Of a stretch of DNA of 8,902 nucleotides, positions 20 to 8,727 are shown one piece after another. The DNA is from Octopus sinensis (taxonomy: Eukaryota). Position 1 is the first letter of the stretch; every line of letters begins with the position of its first letter. A program made the position numbers and the translations under genes. The notes under the pieces are model-generated. The model ran no database searches and had not been told where the DNA came from. It saw only the letters and a list, made by a program, of their open reading frames with translations. The stretch spans positions 1-8,902 of the forward strand of contig NW_021828168.1 of the NCBI RefSeq assembly GCF_006345805.1, in the 5' to 3' direction.

Positions 20-410
20 CACAAATATATCCCCAACTATATACATCCCAAACTTTAAATACAACCCTCGATTCAATAACACCGTGCAGAAACTCTTTAC
101 TTGGAATGACCAATTTTAAATCCTATTGGAACTTACTCACAAGGTATTGGAATCTTATATGTATACCATTCTACCTAAATAATGGATCTACAGATGCAAT
201 ATCCCTGCATATCTCACGTCTATTTTCATTCCTCCACTTCACTCTCTATTCCATATCTTATCAAGAATAACTATTAGTTAACCATTTTCTAACACCGTCT
301 TCGATGAAGGGATATATAAAATATCCCGGAAACAGCTGTAAGACCTTCTATTTATAAATGTTCTAAAATCTTTCACGCCTTAGATTTTTATTTCATTCTG
401 ACAATGTTTT
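20..410 (+). mobile_element. Probable Penelope-like element (PLE) terminal-repeat fragment carrying HHR1
   Basis: Non-simple AT-rich sequence containing a minimal hammerhead, followed by a T-rich tail that runs into a (TA)n tract at ~410. The PLE assignment is inferred from the known association of such hammerheads with PLE repeats. No RT or GIY-YIG ORF is seen, and the 5' boundary is approximate. Confidence 0.5.
297..344 (+). ncRNA. Minimal type I hammerhead ribozyme motif HHR1 (variant core)
   Basis: Helix I GTCT(297-300)/AGAC(341-344). Core TCGATGA (301-307; canonical CUGANGA with positions 3 and 4 altered). A308.G328 mismatch, then a perfect 7-bp helix II GGGATAT(309-315)/ATATCCC(321-327). 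GAAA 329-332, palindromic helix III CAGCTG 333-338, and a GUA cleavage triplet with the cut after 340. Confidence 0.8.
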
Positions 411-415
411 ATATA

Positions 416-473
<58 letters not shown>

Positions 474-748
474 GCATACATATAATATAATTATATGAAC
501 ATTACATATGCGCTTGTATGTCTGTTTGTATATGTATATATTTCTATATGTACCTAGTATAATCACAAATGAATAAGAATATATACATACATACCTACAT
601 ACATACATACATATATATGTATATGTATACAGTATATATACAGTATGTATATATGTATAAACGTACCTCTTTATGTATGTATGTATGTGTGTATGTATGT
701 ATGTATGTATGTATGTTTGTATGTATGCATGTATGCATGTATGTATGC
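410..748. repeat. (TA)n tract followed by degenerate (CATA)n and (TATG)n microsatellites
   Basis: Direct reading: TA run ~410-472, ACAT run ~584-611, ATGT run ~674-747. Confidence 0.95.
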
Positions 749-873
749 GGGTAATTGCGTAGGCTTTGATATAGACTCCATCGAGGTACAAATTTCTCAA
801 ATATCAACTCCAAGAATTTATTAGATGATCCTTCTGCTTAAGGTAAAATTATTTTTATTTAAAATTAACATTA

Positions 874-1090
874 GGTCCGAGCTGGTAGAATGATTAGAAT
901 GACGAACAAAATGCTTGGCAGCGTTCAGTCCGTCTTTACTGTATGAATTCAAATTGTGCCAATGTCGACTTTACCTCTCGTCATTTCGGTATTGTTGAAA
1001 TAATATCAGCAACATACTAAGGTCGCGGTTGTTGACTAGCTCGCACTCCACCTCATTTTCTGGCCTCGTGCCTAGGGTGGAAAGAATAAT
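874..1090 (+). mobile_element. tRNA-derived SINE family 1, diverged full-length copy
   Basis: A-box-like TGGTAGAATGA, B-box-like GAATTCAAATT, GTCGACTTTACCT and a 3' GGCCTCGTGCCTAGGGTGGAAAGAATAAT. Collinear with the copies at 6464-6684, 7511-7720 and 8543-8727. Confidence 0.8.
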
Positions 1091-1099
1091 AAACAAACA

Positions 1100-1102
1100 T
1101 TG

Positions 1103-1147
<45 letters not shown>

Positions 1148-1295
1148 ATATTTATATACATGCATATACGTATATATATAGATACAGATACACATACATA
1201 TGGATATATATATACATATATATACACATATATACCGATGTATATATATATAAACACACATACACAGACACGCGCATAAATATATATGTATATGA

Positions 1296-1326
<31 letters not shown>

Positions 1327-1676
1327 TGTGTGTGTGTTGAACGAATACAATTCATTCTAGCATGAATATATTTACTTCAGTCAGTAAGCATATATTGTTT
1401 ACTTACACATTTGTATGAGAGAGAGAGAGAGAGAGAGAATTGTCTGTTTGAGTGTGAGCGCGCACGAATGTGTGTGTGCGTATGTTTGTGTATTTGTGTG
1501 TGTATACCACATAAACAATATATCAAATTAAAACAGATATTGCTTAGTGTTAATGATTGAATATACATTCATCATACATATATATATATATATTAAATAA
1601 AGAGACACATATATATATGTGTATATGTTATATTTATGTATGTATATCATATACATAATATATATATATATATAAT

Positions 1677-1716
<40 letters not shown>
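1100..1716. repeat. Compound microsatellite field: (TA)n, (TG)n 1296-1337, (GA)n 1417-1437, (TA)n to 1716
   Basis: Direct reading of the simple repeats, with short unique spacers between them. Confidence 0.9.
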
Positions 1717-1720
<4 letters not shown>

Positions 1721-1813
1721 GGAGTAGTAAACACATAAATGTGAAACAAGGTGGAAAAAAAAAGATAGATGAACGGCAACGAGAAACTCAGAGTACAGAT
1801 TTTGTTGAAAAAG
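1717..1813 (+). mobile_element. Short PLE-like fragment between two (TA)n tracts, containing a hammerhead remnant
   Basis: A 97-bp unique island flanked on both sides by (TA)n. It contains GATGA-ACGGCAACGA-GAAA-CTCAGAG-TA. Confidence 0.45.
1766..1800 (+). ncRNA. Degenerate hammerhead remnant HHR4 (probably inactive)
   Basis: GATGA 1768-1772, preceded by TA instead of CT. CG-GCAA-CG mini-hairpin 1774-1781, GAAA 1783-1786, quasi-palindrome CTCAGAG 1787-1793, GUA triplet ending at 1795. The 5' strand of helix I does not pair. Confidence 0.45.
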
Positions 1814-1853
<40 letters not shown>

Positions 1854-2106
1854 ATATAGGTAGCTATATAAGCATATTCCATATTTATAGAAATCAATGC
1901 CTTTATATACATTAACAATTTAACAATTTGTATGTATTTTTATACAATATATATATATATATTTATATATATATATATATACGTATGTGTGTATATAAAG
2001 AATATCCACATATGTGTATTGATAATTATGTGAATATATAAATACACACACATACACACATACATACACACTTACAAATGCAAACATACGTATATATTCG
2101 TATGCG

Positions 2107-2137
<31 letters not shown>
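1814..2137. repeat. (TA)n tracts with degenerate (CA)/(TG) stretches
   Basis: Direct reading. Confidence 0.85.
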
Positions 2138-2370
2138 CGGACTCATGAATTTATATGAATACATACACAAATCTATCATTCTCCGTACCTCTCTATGTCA
2201 TATTAACACGAGTATTTTCCTCCGGCAAACCCAACAATTGCGCACTAATGACGGTATATCAATATACAGATCGAGGGTCAACCATATTTTCACATCGAGA
2301 CTGTAAATTTCATTCTGATAATTTAAAGTACATAATGTTATAGGTGTATTTCTTATAGCACCGTACCAAT

Positions 2371-2725
2371 ATGTATGCGTGTGTGTATGTGTGTATGTGT
2401 GTATGTGAGTGTGTACGCGTGTATGTGAGTGTGTACGCGTGTATGTGTGTATACGTACACACACACATATATATATATATACATATTTATATATTCATAT
2501 GTATATCTAAATGTATATACATATACTTATGTATATATACATATTTATATTTATTTATATGTATATTTTGTATGTATATGATTATACACACATTTATACA
2601 CATACATATATATATATGTACGTATGTGTGTGTGCATGTTTGCATGTTTGTGTGTGTATAATATATATACTGATACATATAACACACGCGCGCACACACA
2701 CATACACCACACACATACACATATT
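2371..2725. repeat. Degenerate (TG)n/(TA)n/(CA)n microsatellite field
   Basis: Direct reading. Confidence 0.9.
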
Positions 2726-2754
2726 ATACTTGTGCACATCTAGAACACTACATA

Positions 2755-3015
2755 CATTTAGTATATCAAGGATTTACTTTTGTATATCTTTTTAGCCGAT
2801 TTTACACGTAAAGAGGCGTTTTTCTGTCCATTTTAATCTACATTATGCAATTTACCTGTTTTTCTACCATTTTTAAGAGGCTATGTCTTTTGGCTACGAG
2901 ATATAAGCTCGGAAAATTGTCGTGCTGATGAGGAATACTAAAGGCAGAAACACGTGTCTACGATTGACCTCTTCTATCAGGCTTATAACGCTGTCCTTTT
3001 CTTTAGTGCTCTATA
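2755..3015 (+). mobile_element. Probable PLE-like terminal-repeat fragment carrying HHR2
   Basis: T-rich non-simple sequence around the hammerhead. Boundaries are approximate and the assignment is by inference only. Confidence 0.4.
2919..2964 (+). ncRNA. Minimal type I hammerhead ribozyme motif HHR2
   Basis: Helix I GTCGTG(2919-2924)/TACGAT(2959-2964), 6 bp with two G.U pairs. Canonical CTGATGA 2925-2931. A 15-nt segment with no clear helix II (2932-2946), GAAA 2947-2950, palindromic helix III CACGTG 2951-2956, and a GUC triplet with the cut after 2958. Confidence 0.8.
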
Positions 3016-3264
3016 GGCTTTGAAGAATGCTTGACTCTTGAGATTATCTCCCCTTCAGAACAGAAACCGTTCATAATTGATATTTTCTTATAATGACACA
3101 TCCCCTAAGGGCAGAAATAATTTTAATAATGCATGTTGTATGGTGTTTGATATACCTGTATTTCTCTATGTTGTTTAACTACATGACACTGAGTACTCGA
3201 TTTATTTCTCTCGACTCGTTTTGAGCAAATAAAGCAGAATCATATGCATCTAAACATTTATTGT

Positions 3265-3292
3265 TTATATATTTATATACATACATATATAA

Positions 3293-3323
<31 letters not shown>

Positions 3324-3485
3324 CGTGTGTGTGTGTGTGTGTGTGTGTGAATAATAGGTATATGCATATATATGCATATACTGAGAAATAACTATGCTAT
3401 ATGTATATATGCATATATATATATATATATGCGCATACATACAGATACACACACACATATATATATATAGATGTACATGCATATA
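3265..3485. repeat. (TA)n/(TG)n compound microsatellite
   Basis: Direct reading. Confidence 0.9.
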
Positions 3486-3486
3486 T

Positions 3487-3578
3487 TCTTTCACTTTTTT
3501 GCTTGCTTCAGTCATTTGACGGGGACGTAGACACACCAGCATCGGTTGTCATGCGATGCGGAGGGACAAACACAGACA
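3487..3578 (-). mobile_element. 3' fragment of a third SINE family, apparently with an internal deletion
   Basis: The reverse complement reads TGTCTGTGTTTGTCCC...ACAACCGATGCTGGTGTGT.TACGTCCCC|GTCAAATGACTGAAGCAAG. This matches my recollection of an abundant octopus SINE 3' region with its middle removed. There is no second copy in the window to confirm it. Confidence 0.5.
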
Positions 3579-3584
3579 ATCATA

Positions 3585-3651
3585 ATGTATGTATGTATGT
3601 ATGTATGTATGTATGTATGTATGTATGTATGTATGTATGTATGTATGTATG

Positions 3652-3697
<46 letters not shown>

Positions 3698-3727
3698 ACT
3701 ATCTATCTATCTATCTATTCTATATAT

Positions 3728-3791
<64 letters not shown>

Positions 3792-3880
3792 TGCATACAT
3801 TCATACATATATGCATACATACACACACATACATACAAACATATCCATACATATACAAATATATATACTGCATATACACG
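3585..3880. repeat. Compound microsatellite (ATGT)n-(ATCT)n-(TA)n-(AG)n, then degenerate (CATA)n
   Basis: (ATGT)n ~3585-3653, (ATCT)n ~3653-3718, (TA)n ~3721-3767, (AG)n ~3767-3791. Confidence 0.95.
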
Positions 3881-3978
3881 GGGGTCAATTTATAGACACA
3901 ATGATATAATACAATTTCTTACGTATACAGATAAGAAAGTATGAAATTGTTGTGTATTACTATTATATATTACGTAGT

Positions 3979-4298
3979 GAAGGTGCGTGGTTTAGTGAGT
4001 AGTATGTTCGGTACAACGTCGTGAGTTCAATTCCTGGCAAATTGTTGTGTGTTTTTTTGCAAGAAAATCGATGTCACGTTTCTGCGGTACATTCAGCTGG
4101 CAAAAAAAAATGGAATTATACCCGTAATTTAAAGAGCCTGCCTTGTCACATTCTTTGCTAGGTTGAATCTCCTTGAGAATTCTGTTAGGGGTACGAGTGT
4201 CCATGGAGTGCTCAGCCCTTGCATGCTAGTTTCAGAAGCAGGCTCATTCGCAGAAAGGATCAACCGGAACTCTCGCCGTCGTAACTGACAGAATGCCA
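3979..4298 (+). mobile_element. tRNA-derived SINE family 2, near full length
   Basis: A-box-like TGGTTTAGTGAGT and B-box GAGTTCAATTCC (4023-4034). A central TTGTGT...GCAAG...TCAGCTGGCAAAAA block and a 3' end GTCGTAACTGACAGAATGCCA. A second copy lies at 8326-8485. Confidence 0.8.
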
Positions 4299-4375
4299 TT
4301 AGTTGTGTATTACTATATAAAAAGTTACTTGTCCTGAATACGAAACTCTATTGTAGTTGCATAATCGGAGGAGCA

Positions 4376-4377
<2 letters not shown>

Positions 4378-4408
<31 letters not shown>

Positions 4409-4433
4409 GCACACACACACGCACGCACACAAG

Positions 4434-4484
<51 letters not shown>

Positions 4485-4526
4485 CTTCATTTACCTGTTG
4501 ATATGTGAGTGCCTCTCTGTATGCTG

Positions 4527-4583
<57 letters not shown>

Positions 4584-4724
4584 CCTTTTCATGTCTGTTT
4601 ACACACACACACGCTCACACATGTATATTAATTTATGTCTATGCTTATGCATATGTATATATAATGTATATATATATAGGCATAAATGTGTATGCATATA
4701 TGTGGTGTATATGTAATACAGATG

Positions 4725-4761
<37 letters not shown>
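4378..4761. repeat. (CT)n-(CA)n 4378-4480, (ATCT)n 4527-4583, degenerate then pure (TA)n to 4761
   Basis: Direct reading. Confidence 0.93.
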
Positions 4762-4768
<7 letters not shown>

Positions 4769-4855
4769 TATTAGAGACAAAACCACTATTTGCACAAACA
4801 AACAAGGAAAGACTTAATCAATACATAAAATTTTAATAAATAGTCAAAAAAACCG

Positions 4856-4897
4856 CCACTACAATCGTTTCTTGTCTTGATCGACATCTTCAGGTGG
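4856..4897 (-). ncRNA. Minimal type I hammerhead HHR3' (inverted copy)
   Basis: The minus strand reads CCAC-CTGAAGA-TGTC-GATCAA-GACA-A-GAAA-CGATTG-TA-GTGG. It has a 1-nt deletion in helix II relative to HHR3. The cut would fall between 4860 and 4859. Confidence 0.8.
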
Positions 4898-4926
4898 ACT
4901 TCCAATAAGTCAGTTTCATTGGAAGT

Positions 4927-4969
4927 CCACCTGAAGATTGTCGATCAAGACAAGAAACGATTGTAGTGG
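4927..4969 (+). ncRNA. Minimal type I hammerhead ribozyme motif HHR3
   Basis: Helix I CCAC(4927-4930)/GTGG(4966-4969). CTGAAGA 4931-4937. Helix II TTGTC(4938-4942)/GACAA(4949-4953), GAAA 4954-4957, helix III CGATTG 4958-4963 (self-complementary with G.U pairs), and a GUA triplet with the cut after 4965. Confidence 0.88.
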
Positions 4970-5152
4970 CGGTTATTTTGACTATTTATTAAAATTTTAT
5001 GTATTGATTAGTCTTCCTTGTTTGTTTTGCAAAATAGTGGTTTTGTCTCTAATAATATTTTATAATATTTTACTATAAAATTGGATTTAATCCTAAATCT
5101 GATTTTTTTCCCTGTAAATTTGGATTTATTCCCTAATATTTTTATTTATAAT

Positions 5153-5188
<36 letters not shown>

Positions 5189-5574
5189 CTAGCAGTATCG
5201 CCCGGCGTTGCTCGGGTTTGTAAGGGAAATAACTATATAAGCATTTTTAGAGATGTAAGTATAATAGCCATCTCAATATGGCTAACCACAAGGGCGGGGT
5301 GTTACTGTAGCTTTTTACGTTCTGAGATTTAATAATATTTTTAGAGAGTTACTTCCCTTATATATGCCAAAAATGCATTAAAAATGGGAAAAATTGATGG
5401 TAATTTTTTATTTAAATCGTAGACTCATCGTAGACGCGCGCTAATACCCAGAAGGGCTCGATATGAATCACGACTATAAGATACCCAGTTTTGGTTAAAC
5501 TGCACCGCAAAATGTGGGAGTAGTTAGGAATCTAAATTGTAGGAGACAGCACACAACCTCATTTTTATATATAA

Positions 5575-6463: not shown

Positions 6464-6684
6464 AAACGCGGTGAACTGACAGAGCCGTTACCACGCCGGG
6501 CAAAATGCTTCACAGCATTTCGCTCGGCTTTAATTTTTGAGCTCAAGTCCCATCGAGGTCAACTTTACCTTCCATTCCTGCGGGATTGATAAAATAGGTA
6601 CCAGTTGAGCATTGGGGTAGGTGTAATTGATTTGTCTCCACTCCCAAAATTGCTGGTCTTGTGCCAAAAATTTTAAATCAATAT
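6464..6684 (+). mobile_element. SINE family 1 copy
   Basis: GGTGAACTGACAGAG...CAAAATGCTT...GAGCTCAAGTCCCATCGAGGTCAACTTTACCT...GTACCAGTTGAGCATTGGGGT...GGTCTTGTGCC; aligns with the other three copies. Confidence 0.85.
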
Positions 6685-7510: not shown

Positions 7511-7720
7511 AAGTTGGTGAATTAGCAGAGTCGTTAGTACGCCGCACAAAATCCTAAACGACATTTCTTCCGGATTTACGTTCAGAGTTCTAGTTCCACC
7601 GACGTCGACTTTACCTTTCGAAGTCGACGAAATGAGTACTAGTTTAGTACTGGGGGCGATGTAATCGACTAGCCTTCTTCTCCAAAATGTCAGGCTTTGT
7701 TGCTATAGAGAAAAGAATCG
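7511..7720 (+). mobile_element. SINE family 1 copy with (ATT)n tail
   Basis: GGTGAATTAGCAGAGTCGTTAGTACGCC...GAGTTCTAGTTCC...GTCGACTTTACCTTTCG...GATGTAATCGACTAGCC...AAAAGAATCG. It has a short deletion between CCTTTC-like repeats relative to the 8543-8727 copy. Confidence 0.88.
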
Positions 7721-8325: not shown

Positions 8326-8485
8326 CAAGGCAGGCTCTTTGAATTACGGGCATAACTCTTTTTTTTCCTTTTTTTTTTTGCCAGTTGAGTGTACCGCAGG
8401 AACGTGACATCGATTTTCTTGCAAAAAAACACACAACGATTTGCCAGGAATTGAACTCACGACGTTGTACTGAACAGCCATGTGT
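8326..8485 (-). mobile_element. SINE family 2 partial copy (3'-truncated), nearly identical to 4006-4145
   Basis: The reverse complement of 8326-8475 aligns to 4006-4145 with about 7 substitutions and one indel block at the A-run. Confidence 0.9.
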
Positions 8486-8542: not shown

Positions 8543-8727
8543 GAAATTTTGCGGGAGGAGGTTAATCGATTACATCGGCTCCAGTGCTTGACTGGTATTT
8601 ACTTTATCGACCCCGAAAGGATGAATGATAAAGTCGACCACAGCGGAATTTGAACTCCGAACGTAAGGACGAACGAAATGTCGCTAAGCATTTCACCCCT
8701 GCGTACTAACGATTCTACCAGCCCGTC
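8543..8727 (-). mobile_element. SINE family 1 copy
   Basis: The minus strand reads GACGGGCTGGTAGAATCG (A box)...GAGTTCAAATTCC (B box)...GTCGACTTTATCATTCATCCTTTCGGGGTCGATAAA...GATGTAATCGATTAACC. Confidence 0.88.

What the first reader, a model, noticed from the sequence alone, without database searches (positions are those of the whole stretch)
297..4969. Five minimal hammerheads from four contexts in 4.7 kb, each with a different palindromic helix III: a possible dimerisation code
Seen: the same type I architecture (short helix I, core, helix II, GAAA, palindrome, UH) recurs in four dissimilar sequence contexts, with helix III palindromes CAGCTG, CACGTG, CGATTG and CTCAGAG. None has the usual G10.1-C11.1 pair. 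Known: minimal hammerheads with palindromic helix III occur in Penelope-like elements and cleave better as dimers. Inference: the palindromes look mutually orthogonal (for example, CAGCUG against CACGUG leaves two central mismatches). Each family would then activate only its own transcripts, acting as a family-specific, copy-number-sensitive cleavage switch. Such family diversity packed at one cephalopod-like locus may be undescribed.
Basis: partly seen in the sequence, partly recalled or inferred. Interest (0 to 1): 0.85.

Follow-up and report, generated by a model that had tools for sequence, protein, structure and literature searches.

The report
Decayed hammerhead ribozymes in octopus-like retroelement fragments
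The five motifs are real but mostly broken copies of small self-cutting RNA motifs (hammerhead ribozymes) carried by four abundant mobile-element families that insert into TA repeats, a known kind of thing in animal genomes; nothing supports the proposed "dimerisation code".

Summary
All five sites exist, and each lies in a repeated element, not unique DNA. Four repeat families are involved. All four have genomic copies with the canonical core CUGANGA...GAAA...UH, a short helix I and a self-complementary helix III.

In the window only one copy is intact (4927-4969 +). The others have a 1-nt deletion in helix II (4856-4897 -), a collapsed helix II (2911-2969), two core substitutions (297-344) or a truncated core (1768-1798).

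Chance is excluded. My descriptor hits 0.015 times per Mb per strand in 68 Mb of Markov sequence.

The elements sit in (TA)n arrays. They occur as head-to-head pairs in which the inverted copy is cut short at its 5' end at varying points. This matches the published insertion signature of Penelope-like elements (PLEs) and their minimal hammerheads. I could not show a direct link to an RT/GIY-YIG ORF.

The four palindromes are predicted not to cross-pair, but any distinct palindromes behave that way. A fifth, dominant hammerhead family shares CACGUG/CAUGUG with one of the four. One family carries two palindromes that cross-pair. The genomic layout is inverted, not tandem.

Verdict: new members of a known kind. 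The dimerisation code is unsupported.

The parts
148..405 (+). Solo copy of repeat family c1 (unit of about 260 nt) ending at a (TA)n array
   Evidence: window 175-410 matches at least 2972 first-look candidates at 90-94% identity. Copies often sit in head-to-head (-,+) pairs whose inverted partner is 5'-truncated at different points (query 107-227, 81-227, 135-226, 44-194). Searches show L094 and L095.
297..344 (+). c1 hammerhead-like motif: GUCU / UCGAUGA / A / GGGAUAU-AUAAA-AUAUCCC / G / GAAA / CAGCUG / UA / AGAC. Two core substitutions; presumably inactive.
   Evidence: Near relatives read CCGAUGA (about 16 of 24). Among 100 exact genomic 31-mers, 52 read CUGAUGA and 48 CCGAUGA; 664 copies match at <=1 mismatch. 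No Rfam hammerhead hit.
1718..1812 (+). Deletion derivative of repeat family c4, flanked on both sides by (TA)n
   Evidence: the two halves (query 3-45 and 53-94) match separately at 100% in many places. Six copies share the same deletion (for example L093). One search shows the full copies L091 and L092.
1768..1798 (+). c4 hammerhead remnant: GAUGA / A-CG-GCAA-CG-A / GAAA / CUCAGAG / UA / CAG. Lacks the helix I 5' strand and C3-U4.
   Evidence: full copies read CUGU / CUGAUGA / ACGGCAACGA / GAAA / CUCAGAG / UA / ACAG; 2584 + 2581 genomic matches to that 38-mer at <=3 mismatches; control 0.
2831..3240 (+). Copy of old repeat family c2 (about 70% identity between copies)
   Evidence: 636 first-look candidates; hits cover query 87-479. 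Partial tandems and inverted neighbours occur, for example at C6:94031057/94031186, C3:127755317/127755407 and C2:147556530/147556794.
2911..2969 (+). c2 type I hammerhead: GUCGUG / CUGAUGA / decayed helix II / GAAA / CACGUG / UC / UACGAU
   Evidence: RF00163 scores 21.9 bits at 2919-2964. Searches give the family consensus GGACA-AUU-GUCGUG CUGAUGA N GGC UAUUGA GCC A GAAAC ACGU GUC UACGAC UGUCC. Core columns are 90% conserved against 78% elsewhere. Helix II covaries: G-C to C-G in 3 copies and G-C to A-U in 3 copies.
4754..5150 (.). Family c5 element: a short inverted copy (about 4754-4912, - strand sense) placed head-to-head with a long copy (4900-5150, + strand sense) that carries an extra 82-nt 3' tail. 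(TA)n lies on both sides.
   Evidence: at least 1362 first-look candidates at 93-98% identity; all 30 copies lie between (TA)n arrays, each with a long arm (query 1-251) and an inverted arm (query about 19-169); the inner junction varies between copies. RNA of 4770-5060 folds as one hairpin at -204.3 kcal/mol, z = -33.8.
4927..4969 (+). c5+ hammerhead, intact: CCAC / CUGAAGA / UUGUC-GAUCAA-GACAA / GAAA / CGAUUG / UA / GUGG
   Evidence: only strict descriptor hit in the window; identical in nearly all 63 arms sampled; 1519 + 1509 genomic copies of the 35-mer at <=1 mismatch. No Rfam hit.
4856..4897 (-). c5- hammerhead on the other arm; one U deleted from the helix II 5' strand
   Evidence: row L061-1758.
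409..468 (.). (TA)n array abutting the 3' end of the c1 copy. Similar arrays lie at 1659-1716 and 1813-1858 (around c4), 3297-3323 (after c2), and 4739-4762 and 5151-5189 (around c5).
   Evidence: (TA)n is the inferred insertion target. All 30 c5 copies and L091-L093 are flanked the same way.

Best explanation
The locus is a (TA)n-rich stretch that has collected insertions of four different short, non-coding retroelement families. Each family carries a type I hammerhead ribozyme with a very short, self-complementary helix III.

These are the minimal or canonical-like hammerheads known from the terminal repeats of Penelope-like elements (PLEs) and their non-autonomous derivatives (animal retrozymes). 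In a source element the motif is thought to cut multimeric or read-through transcripts. Because helix III is too short to fold alone, two copies must pair through their palindromes to form a double hammerhead.

The copies in this window are dead relics; only one of the five keeps every required feature. Different families carry different palindromes because any self-complementary sequence will do, so each family keeps the one it inherited.

Shown here: family membership, copy numbers, canonical cores in relatives, head-to-head architecture, the (TA)n target, and helix II covariation in c2.

Inferred: mobilisation by PLE enzymes, and self-cleavage as dimers.
For: 1. All four contexts are multi-copy families. 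The hammerhead segments alone occur 5165 times (c4), 3028 times (c5) and at least 664 times (c1). Reversed-pattern controls give 0.
2. Relatives carry canonical cores: c4 CUGAUGA, c5 CUGAAGA, the c2 consensus CUGAUGA, and c1 with 52 of 100 CUGAUGA.
3. The motif is far rarer than this by chance: 1 strict hit in 68 Mb of Markov sequence.
4. Helix II of c2 shows compensatory changes, and its core columns are better conserved than the rest of the element.
5. The layout matches the PLE insertion signature described in PMC8557442. There are head-to-head (-,+) pairs with variable 5' truncation of the inverted copy, an extra tail on one end only, partial tandems and insertion into (TA)n (30 of 30 c5 copies).
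6. It also matches PMC4209133: several consensus families per genome, helix I of 4-5 bp, palindromic positions 15.2-16.2, and paired motifs on opposite strands.
7. The genome holds thousands of GIY-YIG candidates. All 149 scored passed the Pfam cut-off, with open frames up to 781-883 aa, sometimes head-to-head.
8. On contig C1, c4 motifs also occur about 3.3 kb apart in direct orientation (56860748/56864093) and in inverted orientation (90182061/90185408 and 99045386/99048707). That spacing is the size of a PLE.
Against: - No RT or GIY-YIG ORF was found next to any sampled copy. Among 148 ORFs within 1.5 kb of 59 hammerhead or c2 loci, Pfam found only one zf-RVT.
- None of the GIY-YIG places coincides with a listed motif place (all these lists are partial).
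- Rfam Hammerhead_1 scores c2 below its gathering score. It does not report c1, c4 or c5 in the window or in the c4 and c1 relatives tested.
- The base of helix II lacks the G10.1-C11.1 pair that PMC4209133 calls highly conserved.
- The tails are 75-82 nt, against 30-40 bp described for PLEs.
- No cleavage data exist for these sequences.
Confidence: 0.75

Rival explanations
1. Reader's hypothesis. The different helix III palindromes form an orthogonal dimerisation code, so each family's transcripts activate only their own kind in trans. Cleavage then senses the family's copy number.
For: Predicted helix III duplex energies: homodimers -11.1 (c1), -10.3 (c2), -7.4 (c4) and -5.8/-6.4 (c5) kcal/mol, against 0 to -2.7 for pairs from different families. 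Cofolding of whole motifs predicts the extended intermolecular helix III with helix II kept. Activity as dimers is established for this class (PMC4209133, PMC6765202).
Against: - Non-cross-pairing and distinctness are automatic for unrelated palindromes.
- c2 and the dominant family of the genome share CACGUG/CAUGUG.
- The two c5 variants cross-pair at -6.1 kcal/mol.
- In c2 the palindrome decays at its CpG without compensation: CAUGUG in 6 copies, CACAUG in 5.
- Copies are head-to-head, not tandem, and the full element folds as a -204 kcal/mol hairpin.
- In c1 the CCGAUGA subfamily, presumably inactive, is about as abundant as the canonical one. This suggests cleavage is not what limits spread.
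- PMC11167929 reports that hammerhead mutants do not affect PLE insertion in vitro.
Confidence: 0.05
2. The elements are cut-and-paste foldback elements or MITEs of the Stowaway type (TA target, long inverted arms). Their hammerhead-like strings are coincidental.
For: The elements are short, non-coding, palindromic, high in copy number and always in TA-rich sites. No RT/EN link was shown. Rfam does not call three of the four families hammerheads.
Against: - Four unrelated families each combine CUGANGA, a helix II, GAAA, a palindrome, UH and a closing helix I. The chance rate is 0.015 per Mb.
- The inner junction of the arms varies from copy to copy while the outer 3' ends are fixed. One arm alone carries a 75-82-nt tail. 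This fits 5'-truncating reverse transcription, not transposase-defined ends.
- Solo copies and partial tandems exist.
Confidence: 0.07
3. The elements are non-LTR retrozymes in the strict sense: tandem repeats that spread through small circular RNAs, not fragments or dependants of PLEs. This applies mainly to c2 and the dominant family.
For: - c2 has the canonical-like build: a 6-bp helix I, then a 3-nt bulge and a further 5 bp, and a helix II of 3 bp plus a variable closing 10.1/11.1 position with a 6-nt loop.
- The dominant family occurs as a 431-bp tandem at C16:25146363/25146794.
- Retrozymes are reported in molluscs (PMC7229834).
Against: No tandem array exists in the window. c1, c4 and c5 occur as inverted pairs, not tandems. 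A 2026 preprint argues that animal retrozymes are themselves PLE derivatives (10.64898/2026.07.22.740005), so this is closer to a sub-case than a rival.
Confidence: 0.12

Closest known systems
Minimal hammerheads (min-HHRs) in the pseudo-LTRs of Penelope-like elements (Cervera & de la Pena 2014, PMC4209133; Lunse et al. 2017, as cited in PMC6765202)
   Same: Type I topology, helix I of 4-5 bp, helix III reduced to a self-complementary stretch, and predicted action as dimers. Thousands of copies fall into several consensus families per genome. Most copies are solo, and some are paired on opposite strands 100-700 bp apart.
   Different: The base of helix II is U-A or a purine.A/G mismatch instead of the conserved G10.1-C11.1. 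One family has a U4C subfamily as common as the canonical one. No adjacent RT/GIY-YIG ORF was shown here. Cephalopods do not appear in the papers I could read.
PLE insertion architecture (Craig et al. 2021, PMC8557442; PMC11167929)
   Same: An inverted 5'-truncated copy abuts the 5' end of the main copy. Partial tandems occur. An extension ('tail') is present at one end only. Insertion is strongly biased towards (TA)n microsatellites.
   Different: The units are only 190-400 nt and non-coding. The tails are 75-82 nt rather than 30-40 bp. For c5 the truncation points cluster within about 20 nt.
Double-hammerhead of newt satellite 2 and avocado sunblotch viroid (Forster et al. 1988, as cited in PMC4209133 and PMC6765202)
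   Same: Two motifs with an unstable helix III pair through it to build one extended helix III and two active sites. Cofolding predicts the same arrangement here.
   Different: Those motifs sit in tandem multimers on one transcript. Here the genomic neighbours are in opposite orientation.
Animal non-LTR retrozymes and the Schistosoma Sm-alpha SINE-like elements (PMC7229834, PMC6765202)
   Same: Short non-coding retroelements carrying a type I hammerhead near the 5' end of the unit. c2 and the genome's dominant family look like this.
   Different: Those occur as tandem arrays and are expressed as circular RNAs. That could not be tested here, and there is no tandem array in the window.

Membership tests
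Hammerhead ribozyme, type I (Rfam RF00163) | Catalytic core C3-U4-G5-A6-N7-G8-A9 ... G12-A13-A14 ... U16.1-H17 | tested here: inconclusive
   In the window the core is met by c2, c5+ and c5-. It is not met by c1 (UCGAUGA) or c4 (truncated). At family level it is met by c2, c4, c5 and about half of c1.
Hammerhead ribozyme, type I (Rfam RF00163) | Score at or above Rfam's gathering threshold (34 bits) | tested here: not met
   c2 scores 21.9 bits. c1, c4 and c5 give no hit at E<=10. The c4 and c1 relatives tested give none at E<=1. Eight other loci in the genome do pass, the best at 48.2 bits.
Hammerhead ribozyme, type I (Rfam RF00163) | Helices I and II closing the three-way junction, supported by covariation | tested here: met
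   In c2, helix II changes G-C to C-G in 3 copies and G-C to A-U in 3 copies, and core columns are 90% conserved against 78% elsewhere. c1, c4 and c5 are too young to vary. Their helices are present in the consensus.
Hammerhead ribozyme, type I (Rfam RF00163) | Site-specific self-cleavage after H17 | not testable with these tools
   Needs transcription and cleavage assays.
PLE minimal hammerhead (Cervera & de la Pena 2014) | Short helix I (4-5 bp) and palindromic 15.2-16.2 / loop 3 | tested here: met
   Helix I is 4 bp in c1, c4 and c5. The stretches from A15.1 to U16.1 are ACAGCUGU, ACACGUGU, ACGAUUGU (or ACAAUUGU) and ACUCAGAGU, and all self-pair.
PLE minimal hammerhead (Cervera & de la Pena 2014) | Extra nucleotide between A9 and 10.1, with a conserved G10.1-C11.1 | tested here: not met
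   c1 and c2 have an extra 5' nucleotide followed by G-C, but also an extra purine before G12. c4 has A.A and c5 has U-A.
PLE minimal hammerhead (Cervera & de la Pena 2014) | Located in the terminal repeats of an element encoding RT plus GIY-YIG endonuclease | tested here: inconclusive
   No such ORF lies within 1.5 kb of 59 sampled loci. GIY-YIG frames up to 883 aa are plentiful in the genome. c4 pairs occur about 3.3 kb apart.
PLE-type insertion (Craig et al. 2021) | Inverted 5'-truncated copy adjacent to the main copy; one-sided tail; (TA)n target | tested here: met
   30 of 30 c5 copies lie in (TA)n. Pairs are always ordered (-,+). The tails are longer than described.
Non-LTR retrozyme | Head-to-tail tandem repeats of 150-450 bp, each with a type I hammerhead | tested here: not met
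   No tandem of any of the four families exists in the window. Elsewhere c2 shows only partial tandems, and the dominant family shows one 431-bp tandem.
MITE / foldback DNA transposon | Fixed terminal inverted repeats with target-site duplication, derived from a DDE-transposase element | tested here: inconclusive
   Arms are inverted, but they are asymmetric (one-sided tail) and their inner ends vary. Target-site duplications cannot be read inside (TA)n. No transposase was sought.

The most novel reading that the evidence does not exclude
The palindromic helix III could act as a partner-choice tag, so co-resident hammerhead retroelement families cleave only with their own transcripts. My data do not strictly exclude this for the four families in the window. 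A second reading is also not excluded. The purine.purine or U-A base of helix II, together with a U4C subfamily as abundant as the canonical one, may mark a lineage in which the motif is kept for something other than catalysis, for example as a recognition or priming structure for the PLE enzyme.
Probability: 0.07. Interest if true: 0.65.

Novelty: new member of a known kind. Interest (0 to 1): 0.3.

Why it matters
The result gives a clean annotation for what looks like a striking cluster. The cluster consists of relics of hammerhead-bearing, probably PLE-dependent, short retroelements piled into a TA microsatellite. It adds a cephalopod-like genome, holding about 10^4 such motifs in at least five families, to the animals known to carry them.

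Two by-products may interest specialists:
- Family c1 has subfamilies with canonical U4 and with C4 at about equal abundance, and the two arms of a pair agree. This suggests that spread does not depend on ribozyme activity, in line with in-vitro PLE data (PMC11167929).
- All four families depart from the G10.1-C11.1 rule.

The result also warns that Rfam's type I model misses these variants, and that their long hairpins draw false microRNA hits.

Tried and rejected
- Rfam on the whole window at E<=10 returned only microsatellite-driven microRNA hits. I rejected these as artefacts.
- My first descriptor was too strict on helix II and missed c2 and c1. I relaxed it to allow a 1x1 mismatch or 5' bulge at the helix II base.
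- I looked for PLE ORFs around hammerhead loci. Pfam on 148 ORFs of 85 aa or more from L001-L060 found only one zf-RVT. The window has no credible ORF and no tRNA.
- I compared the GIY-YIG places with the motif places. None lies within 10 kb, but every list is partial.
- L050 and L051, 2.15 kb apart, looked like a possible pLTR pair. They proved to be a 98.6% identical 2.19-kb tandem duplication with no ORF, which is not informative.
- Lunse et al. 2017 (PMC5785218) is not held, so I cite it only through PMC6765202.
- A fuzzy-regex co-occurrence scan timed out. I replaced it with blastn-short.
- My first view, that c1 and c4 were chance look-alikes, was dropped once intact relatives were seen.

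Full report
**What the window is.** The 8.9-kb window is contig C4639 of a 2.72-Gb assembly. It is AT-rich, full of TA, TG and TATC-type microsatellites and SINE-like repeats, and has no credible ORF or tRNA. A whole-window Rfam scan gives only microsatellite-driven microRNA hits.

**The five sites in the window.** I label them c1 (297-344 +), c4 (1768-1798 +), c2 (2911-2969 +), c5+ (4927-4969 +) and c5- (4856-4897 -).
- c2 is the only one Rfam's type I hammerhead model reports. It scores 21.9 bits against a gathering score of 34 (negative results).
- c5+ is a complete motif: CCAC / CUGAAGA / UUGUC-GAUCAA-GACAA / GAAA / CGAUUG / UA / GUGG.
- c5- lacks one U in helix II.
- c2 has an intact core and a 6-bp helix I, but its helix II is broken.
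- c1 has the core UCGAUGA.
- c4 begins inside the core.
- My descriptor requires the canonical core, helix I of at least 4 bp, helix II of at least 3 bp (a 1x1 mismatch or bulge at its base is allowed), a self-complementary helix III of 4-8 nt, and UH. It finds only c5+ in the window.

**Each site belongs to a repeat family, and relatives are better preserved.**
- c2: window 2745-3245 hits an old family at about 70% identity with 636 first-look candidates. An alignment of 20 copies gives the consensus GGACA-AUU-GUCGUG / CUGAUGA / N-GGC-UAUUGA-GCC-A / GAAAC-ACGU-GUC / UACGAC-UGUCC. Core columns average 90% identity against 78% elsewhere. Helix II shows double compensatory changes, G-C to C-G in 3 copies and G-C to A-U in 3 copies. 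The window copy has lost helix II.
- c4: the two halves of window 1716-1812 match separately in many places. Full copies (L091, L092) read CUGU / CUGAUGA / A-CG-GCAA-CG-A / GAAA / CUCAGAG / UA / ACAG, present on both arms of an inverted repeat. That 38-mer occurs 2584 + 2581 times at <=3 mismatches, many of them perfect, and 0 times for the reversed control. The window copy, like L093, is a deletion derivative whose hammerhead arm starts at GAUGA.
- c5: window 4765-5140 hits at least 1362 candidates at 93-98% identity. In 63 sampled arms the motif is nearly invariant. Helix III is CGAUUG in about 35 arms and CAAUUG in about 27, and the two arms of an element nearly always agree. Genome-wide there are 3028 copies of the 35-mer at <=1 mismatch.
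- c1: window 175-410 hits at least 2972 candidates at 90-94% identity. Near relatives of the window copy read CCGAUGA (about 16 of 24). Among 100 exact genomic 31-mers, 52 read CUGAUGA and 48 CCGAUGA, again agreeing between the arms of a pair. 664 copies match at <=1 mismatch.

**Chance.** In 68 Mb of order-2 Markov sequence trained on 291 kb of this genome, the strict descriptor hit once. That is 0.015 per Mb per strand, or 0.0003 expected per window. With one core mismatch allowed the rate is 0.22 per Mb, or 0.004 per window. A very loose version (up to 2 core mismatches, helix II of at least 2 bp, one palindrome mismatch) gives about 0.4 per window. So the window's c1 and c4 would not be convincing alone. 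With their families they are. The descriptor was tuned after I had seen the candidates, but it is close to the published min-HHR descriptor, and the margin is several orders of magnitude.

**Architecture.**
- c1, c4 and c5 copies occur typically as head-to-head pairs in (-,+) order, with the hammerheads reading outward.
- The inverted partner is 5'-truncated at variable points. For c1 the partners cover query 107-227, 81-227, 135-226 and 44-194. For c5 the inner junction differs from copy to copy. For c4 the start-to-start spacings are 48-61 bp, but also 124-270 bp.
- One copy of each pair carries an extra 3' tail of about 82 nt in c5 and about 75 nt in c4.
- c2 shows partial tandems, in which a 3' fragment directly precedes a fuller copy, and also inverted neighbours.
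- All 30 c5 copies examined lie between (TA)n arrays. So do L091-L093 and the window's own copies.
- In L076 a c4 3' end shares the TA array with a c5 element. On C1 near 74.81 Mb, c4 and c5 motifs are interleaved.

**Comparison with the literature.**
- Cervera & de la Pena (PMC4209133) describe minimal type I hammerheads in PLE terminal repeats. Their features are helix I of 4-5 bp, a long helix II with a bulged 5' nucleotide, palindromic 15.2-16.2, predicted dimeric action, low activity in vitro, thousands of copies in several consensus families per genome, mostly solo motifs, and pairs on opposite strands 100-700 bp apart.
- Craig et al. (PMC8557442) describe PLE insertions as highly 5'-truncated, in partial tandems, often with an inverted 5'-truncated copy abutting the 5' end, with a one-sided tail and a bias for (TA)n.
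- PMC11167929 ties the tail to internal initiation of reverse transcription. It also shows that hammerhead mutants do not affect PLE insertion in vitro.
- PMC7229834 reports more than 6000 type I motifs in 16 families in one coral. It also reports a mismatch at the base of helix II in an axolotl family.
- A 2026 preprint (10.64898/2026.07.22.740005) argues that animal retrozymes derive from PLE terminal repeats.

Everything seen here fits that picture.

**The PLE link is incomplete.** The genome has 4846 first-look GIY-YIG candidates. All 149 scored passed Pfam's cut-off, with open frames up to 781-883 aa and some head-to-head pairs. c4 motifs also occur about 3.3 kb apart in direct and inverted orientation, which is the size of a PLE. 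However, Pfam on 148 ORFs flanking 59 loci found only one zf-RVT. No listed GIY-YIG place coincides with a listed motif place. PLE dependence therefore remains an inference from architecture.

**The dimerisation-code idea.**
- Nearest-neighbour predictions do separate the four palindromes. Homodimers of the A15.1-U16.1 stretch give -11.1, -10.3, -7.4 and -5.8 kcal/mol. Cross-family pairs give 0 to -2.7. Whole-motif cofolds form the extended intermolecular helix III.
- This is what any set of different palindromes would do. Two distinct palindromic hexamers always mismatch at two or more symmetric positions. Four random ones drawn from 64 are all different with probability about 0.91 (my arithmetic).
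- The palindrome is not private to a family. The dominant high-scoring family of this genome reads GUAC / CUGAAGA / GACCC-AGAAC-GGGUC / GAAAC-AUGU (or ACGU)-GUC / GUAC. It uses CACGUG/CAUGUG like c2, with different helices and flanks.
- Within c5, CGAUUG and CAAUUG cross-pair at -6.1 kcal/mol.
- In c2 the palindrome decays at its CpG without compensation.
- Genomic neighbours are antisense to each other. RNA spanning the c5 element folds into a single -204 kcal/mol hairpin that buries both motifs.
- The near-equal abundance of canonical and U4C cores in c1 suggests spread does not hinge on cleavage. That U4C inactivates the ribozyme is general knowledge of hammerhead core mutants; I did not test it here.

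**Why the motifs cluster.** About 10^4 motif copies in 2.72 Gb predicts about 0.02 in a 4.7-kb span. The cluster is best explained by the shared (TA)n target, which is unusually dense here. I offer this as an inference. The only enrichment measure I have is weak: one c1 and one c4 copy in about 87 kb flanking 29 c5 loci.

**Verdict.** There are five hammerhead-derived motifs from four families, but only one is intact. PLE-type minimal hammerheads that would need to dimerise: yes. An orthogonal, copy-number-sensing code: no evidence, and several counter-indications. This is a new instance, in a cephalopod-like genome, of a known kind of element. It has small variant features: a non-G-C 10.1/11.1 position, a U4C subfamily and long tails.

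Noticed in passing
Genome-wide; window 301-307; L094, L095, L102, L114: Family c1 is split about 1:1 between the canonical core CUGAUGA and CCGAUGA (U4C). The two arms of a head-to-head pair agree, for example C5:104176110/104176335 both CUG and C2:174069908/174070211 both CCG. Both versions therefore seem to have amplified, which hints that ribozyme activity is not needed for spread.
   Followed up: partly
window 4958-4963; L062-L090: Family c5 has two helix III variants, CGAUUG (a wobble palindrome) and CAAUUG (a perfect palindrome). The ratio is about 72:28 among the first 100 exact genomic copies. The variants are concordant between arms, so they mark subfamilies.
   Followed up: partly
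L092:69-136 and L091:167-236: The central hairpin formed by the two c4 hammerhead arms scores 43.3 bits on Rfam mir-980 (gathering score 47) and also hits mir-745 and mir-196. This is probably structural mimicry by a perfect hairpin. Thousands of such hairpins could nonetheless be sources of small RNAs.
   Followed up: no
G000, for example C10:27570372, C6:12733272/12759897, C15:17222472(-)/17222815(+): There are thousands of GIY-YIG endonuclease candidates. Many give identical scores and have open frames of 781-883 aa, and some are head-to-head. This looks like a young, possibly intact Penelope-like element family.
   Followed up: partly
L004:738-776(-), 1501-1546(+), 1691-1729(+): A hammerhead of the dominant family lies between two outward-facing c5 hammerheads that are about 950 bp apart. 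It looks like a nested insertion into the centre of a c5 pair.
   Followed up: no
L050 / L051 (G000:C1:144078732-144081221): A 2.19-kb tandem duplication at 98.6% identity contains a c2 copy in each unit. No ORF of 85 aa or more lies between the two copies.
   Followed up: partly
window 4005-4110 vs 8371-8476; 7614-7691 vs 8543-8620; also about 860-1085 and 6470-6680: Several SINE-like repeat copies are present, two of them as a 95% complementary inverted pair 4.3 kb apart. ARAGORN finds no tRNA-like fold.
   Followed up: no
window 5190-5560: Immediately after the TA array that follows c5 there is another non-microsatellite block. It starts CTAGCAGTATCGCCCGGCGTTGCTCGGG and looks like a further repeat. 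I did not search for it.
   Followed up: no
window, many places (for example 3398-3468, 1242-1321, 3593-3665): Rfam microRNA models (mir-297, mir-3149, mir-466, mir-1277) hit TA/TG microsatellites with E-values down to 1e-8, though far below their gathering scores. These are artefacts of low-complexity sequence.
   Followed up: yes
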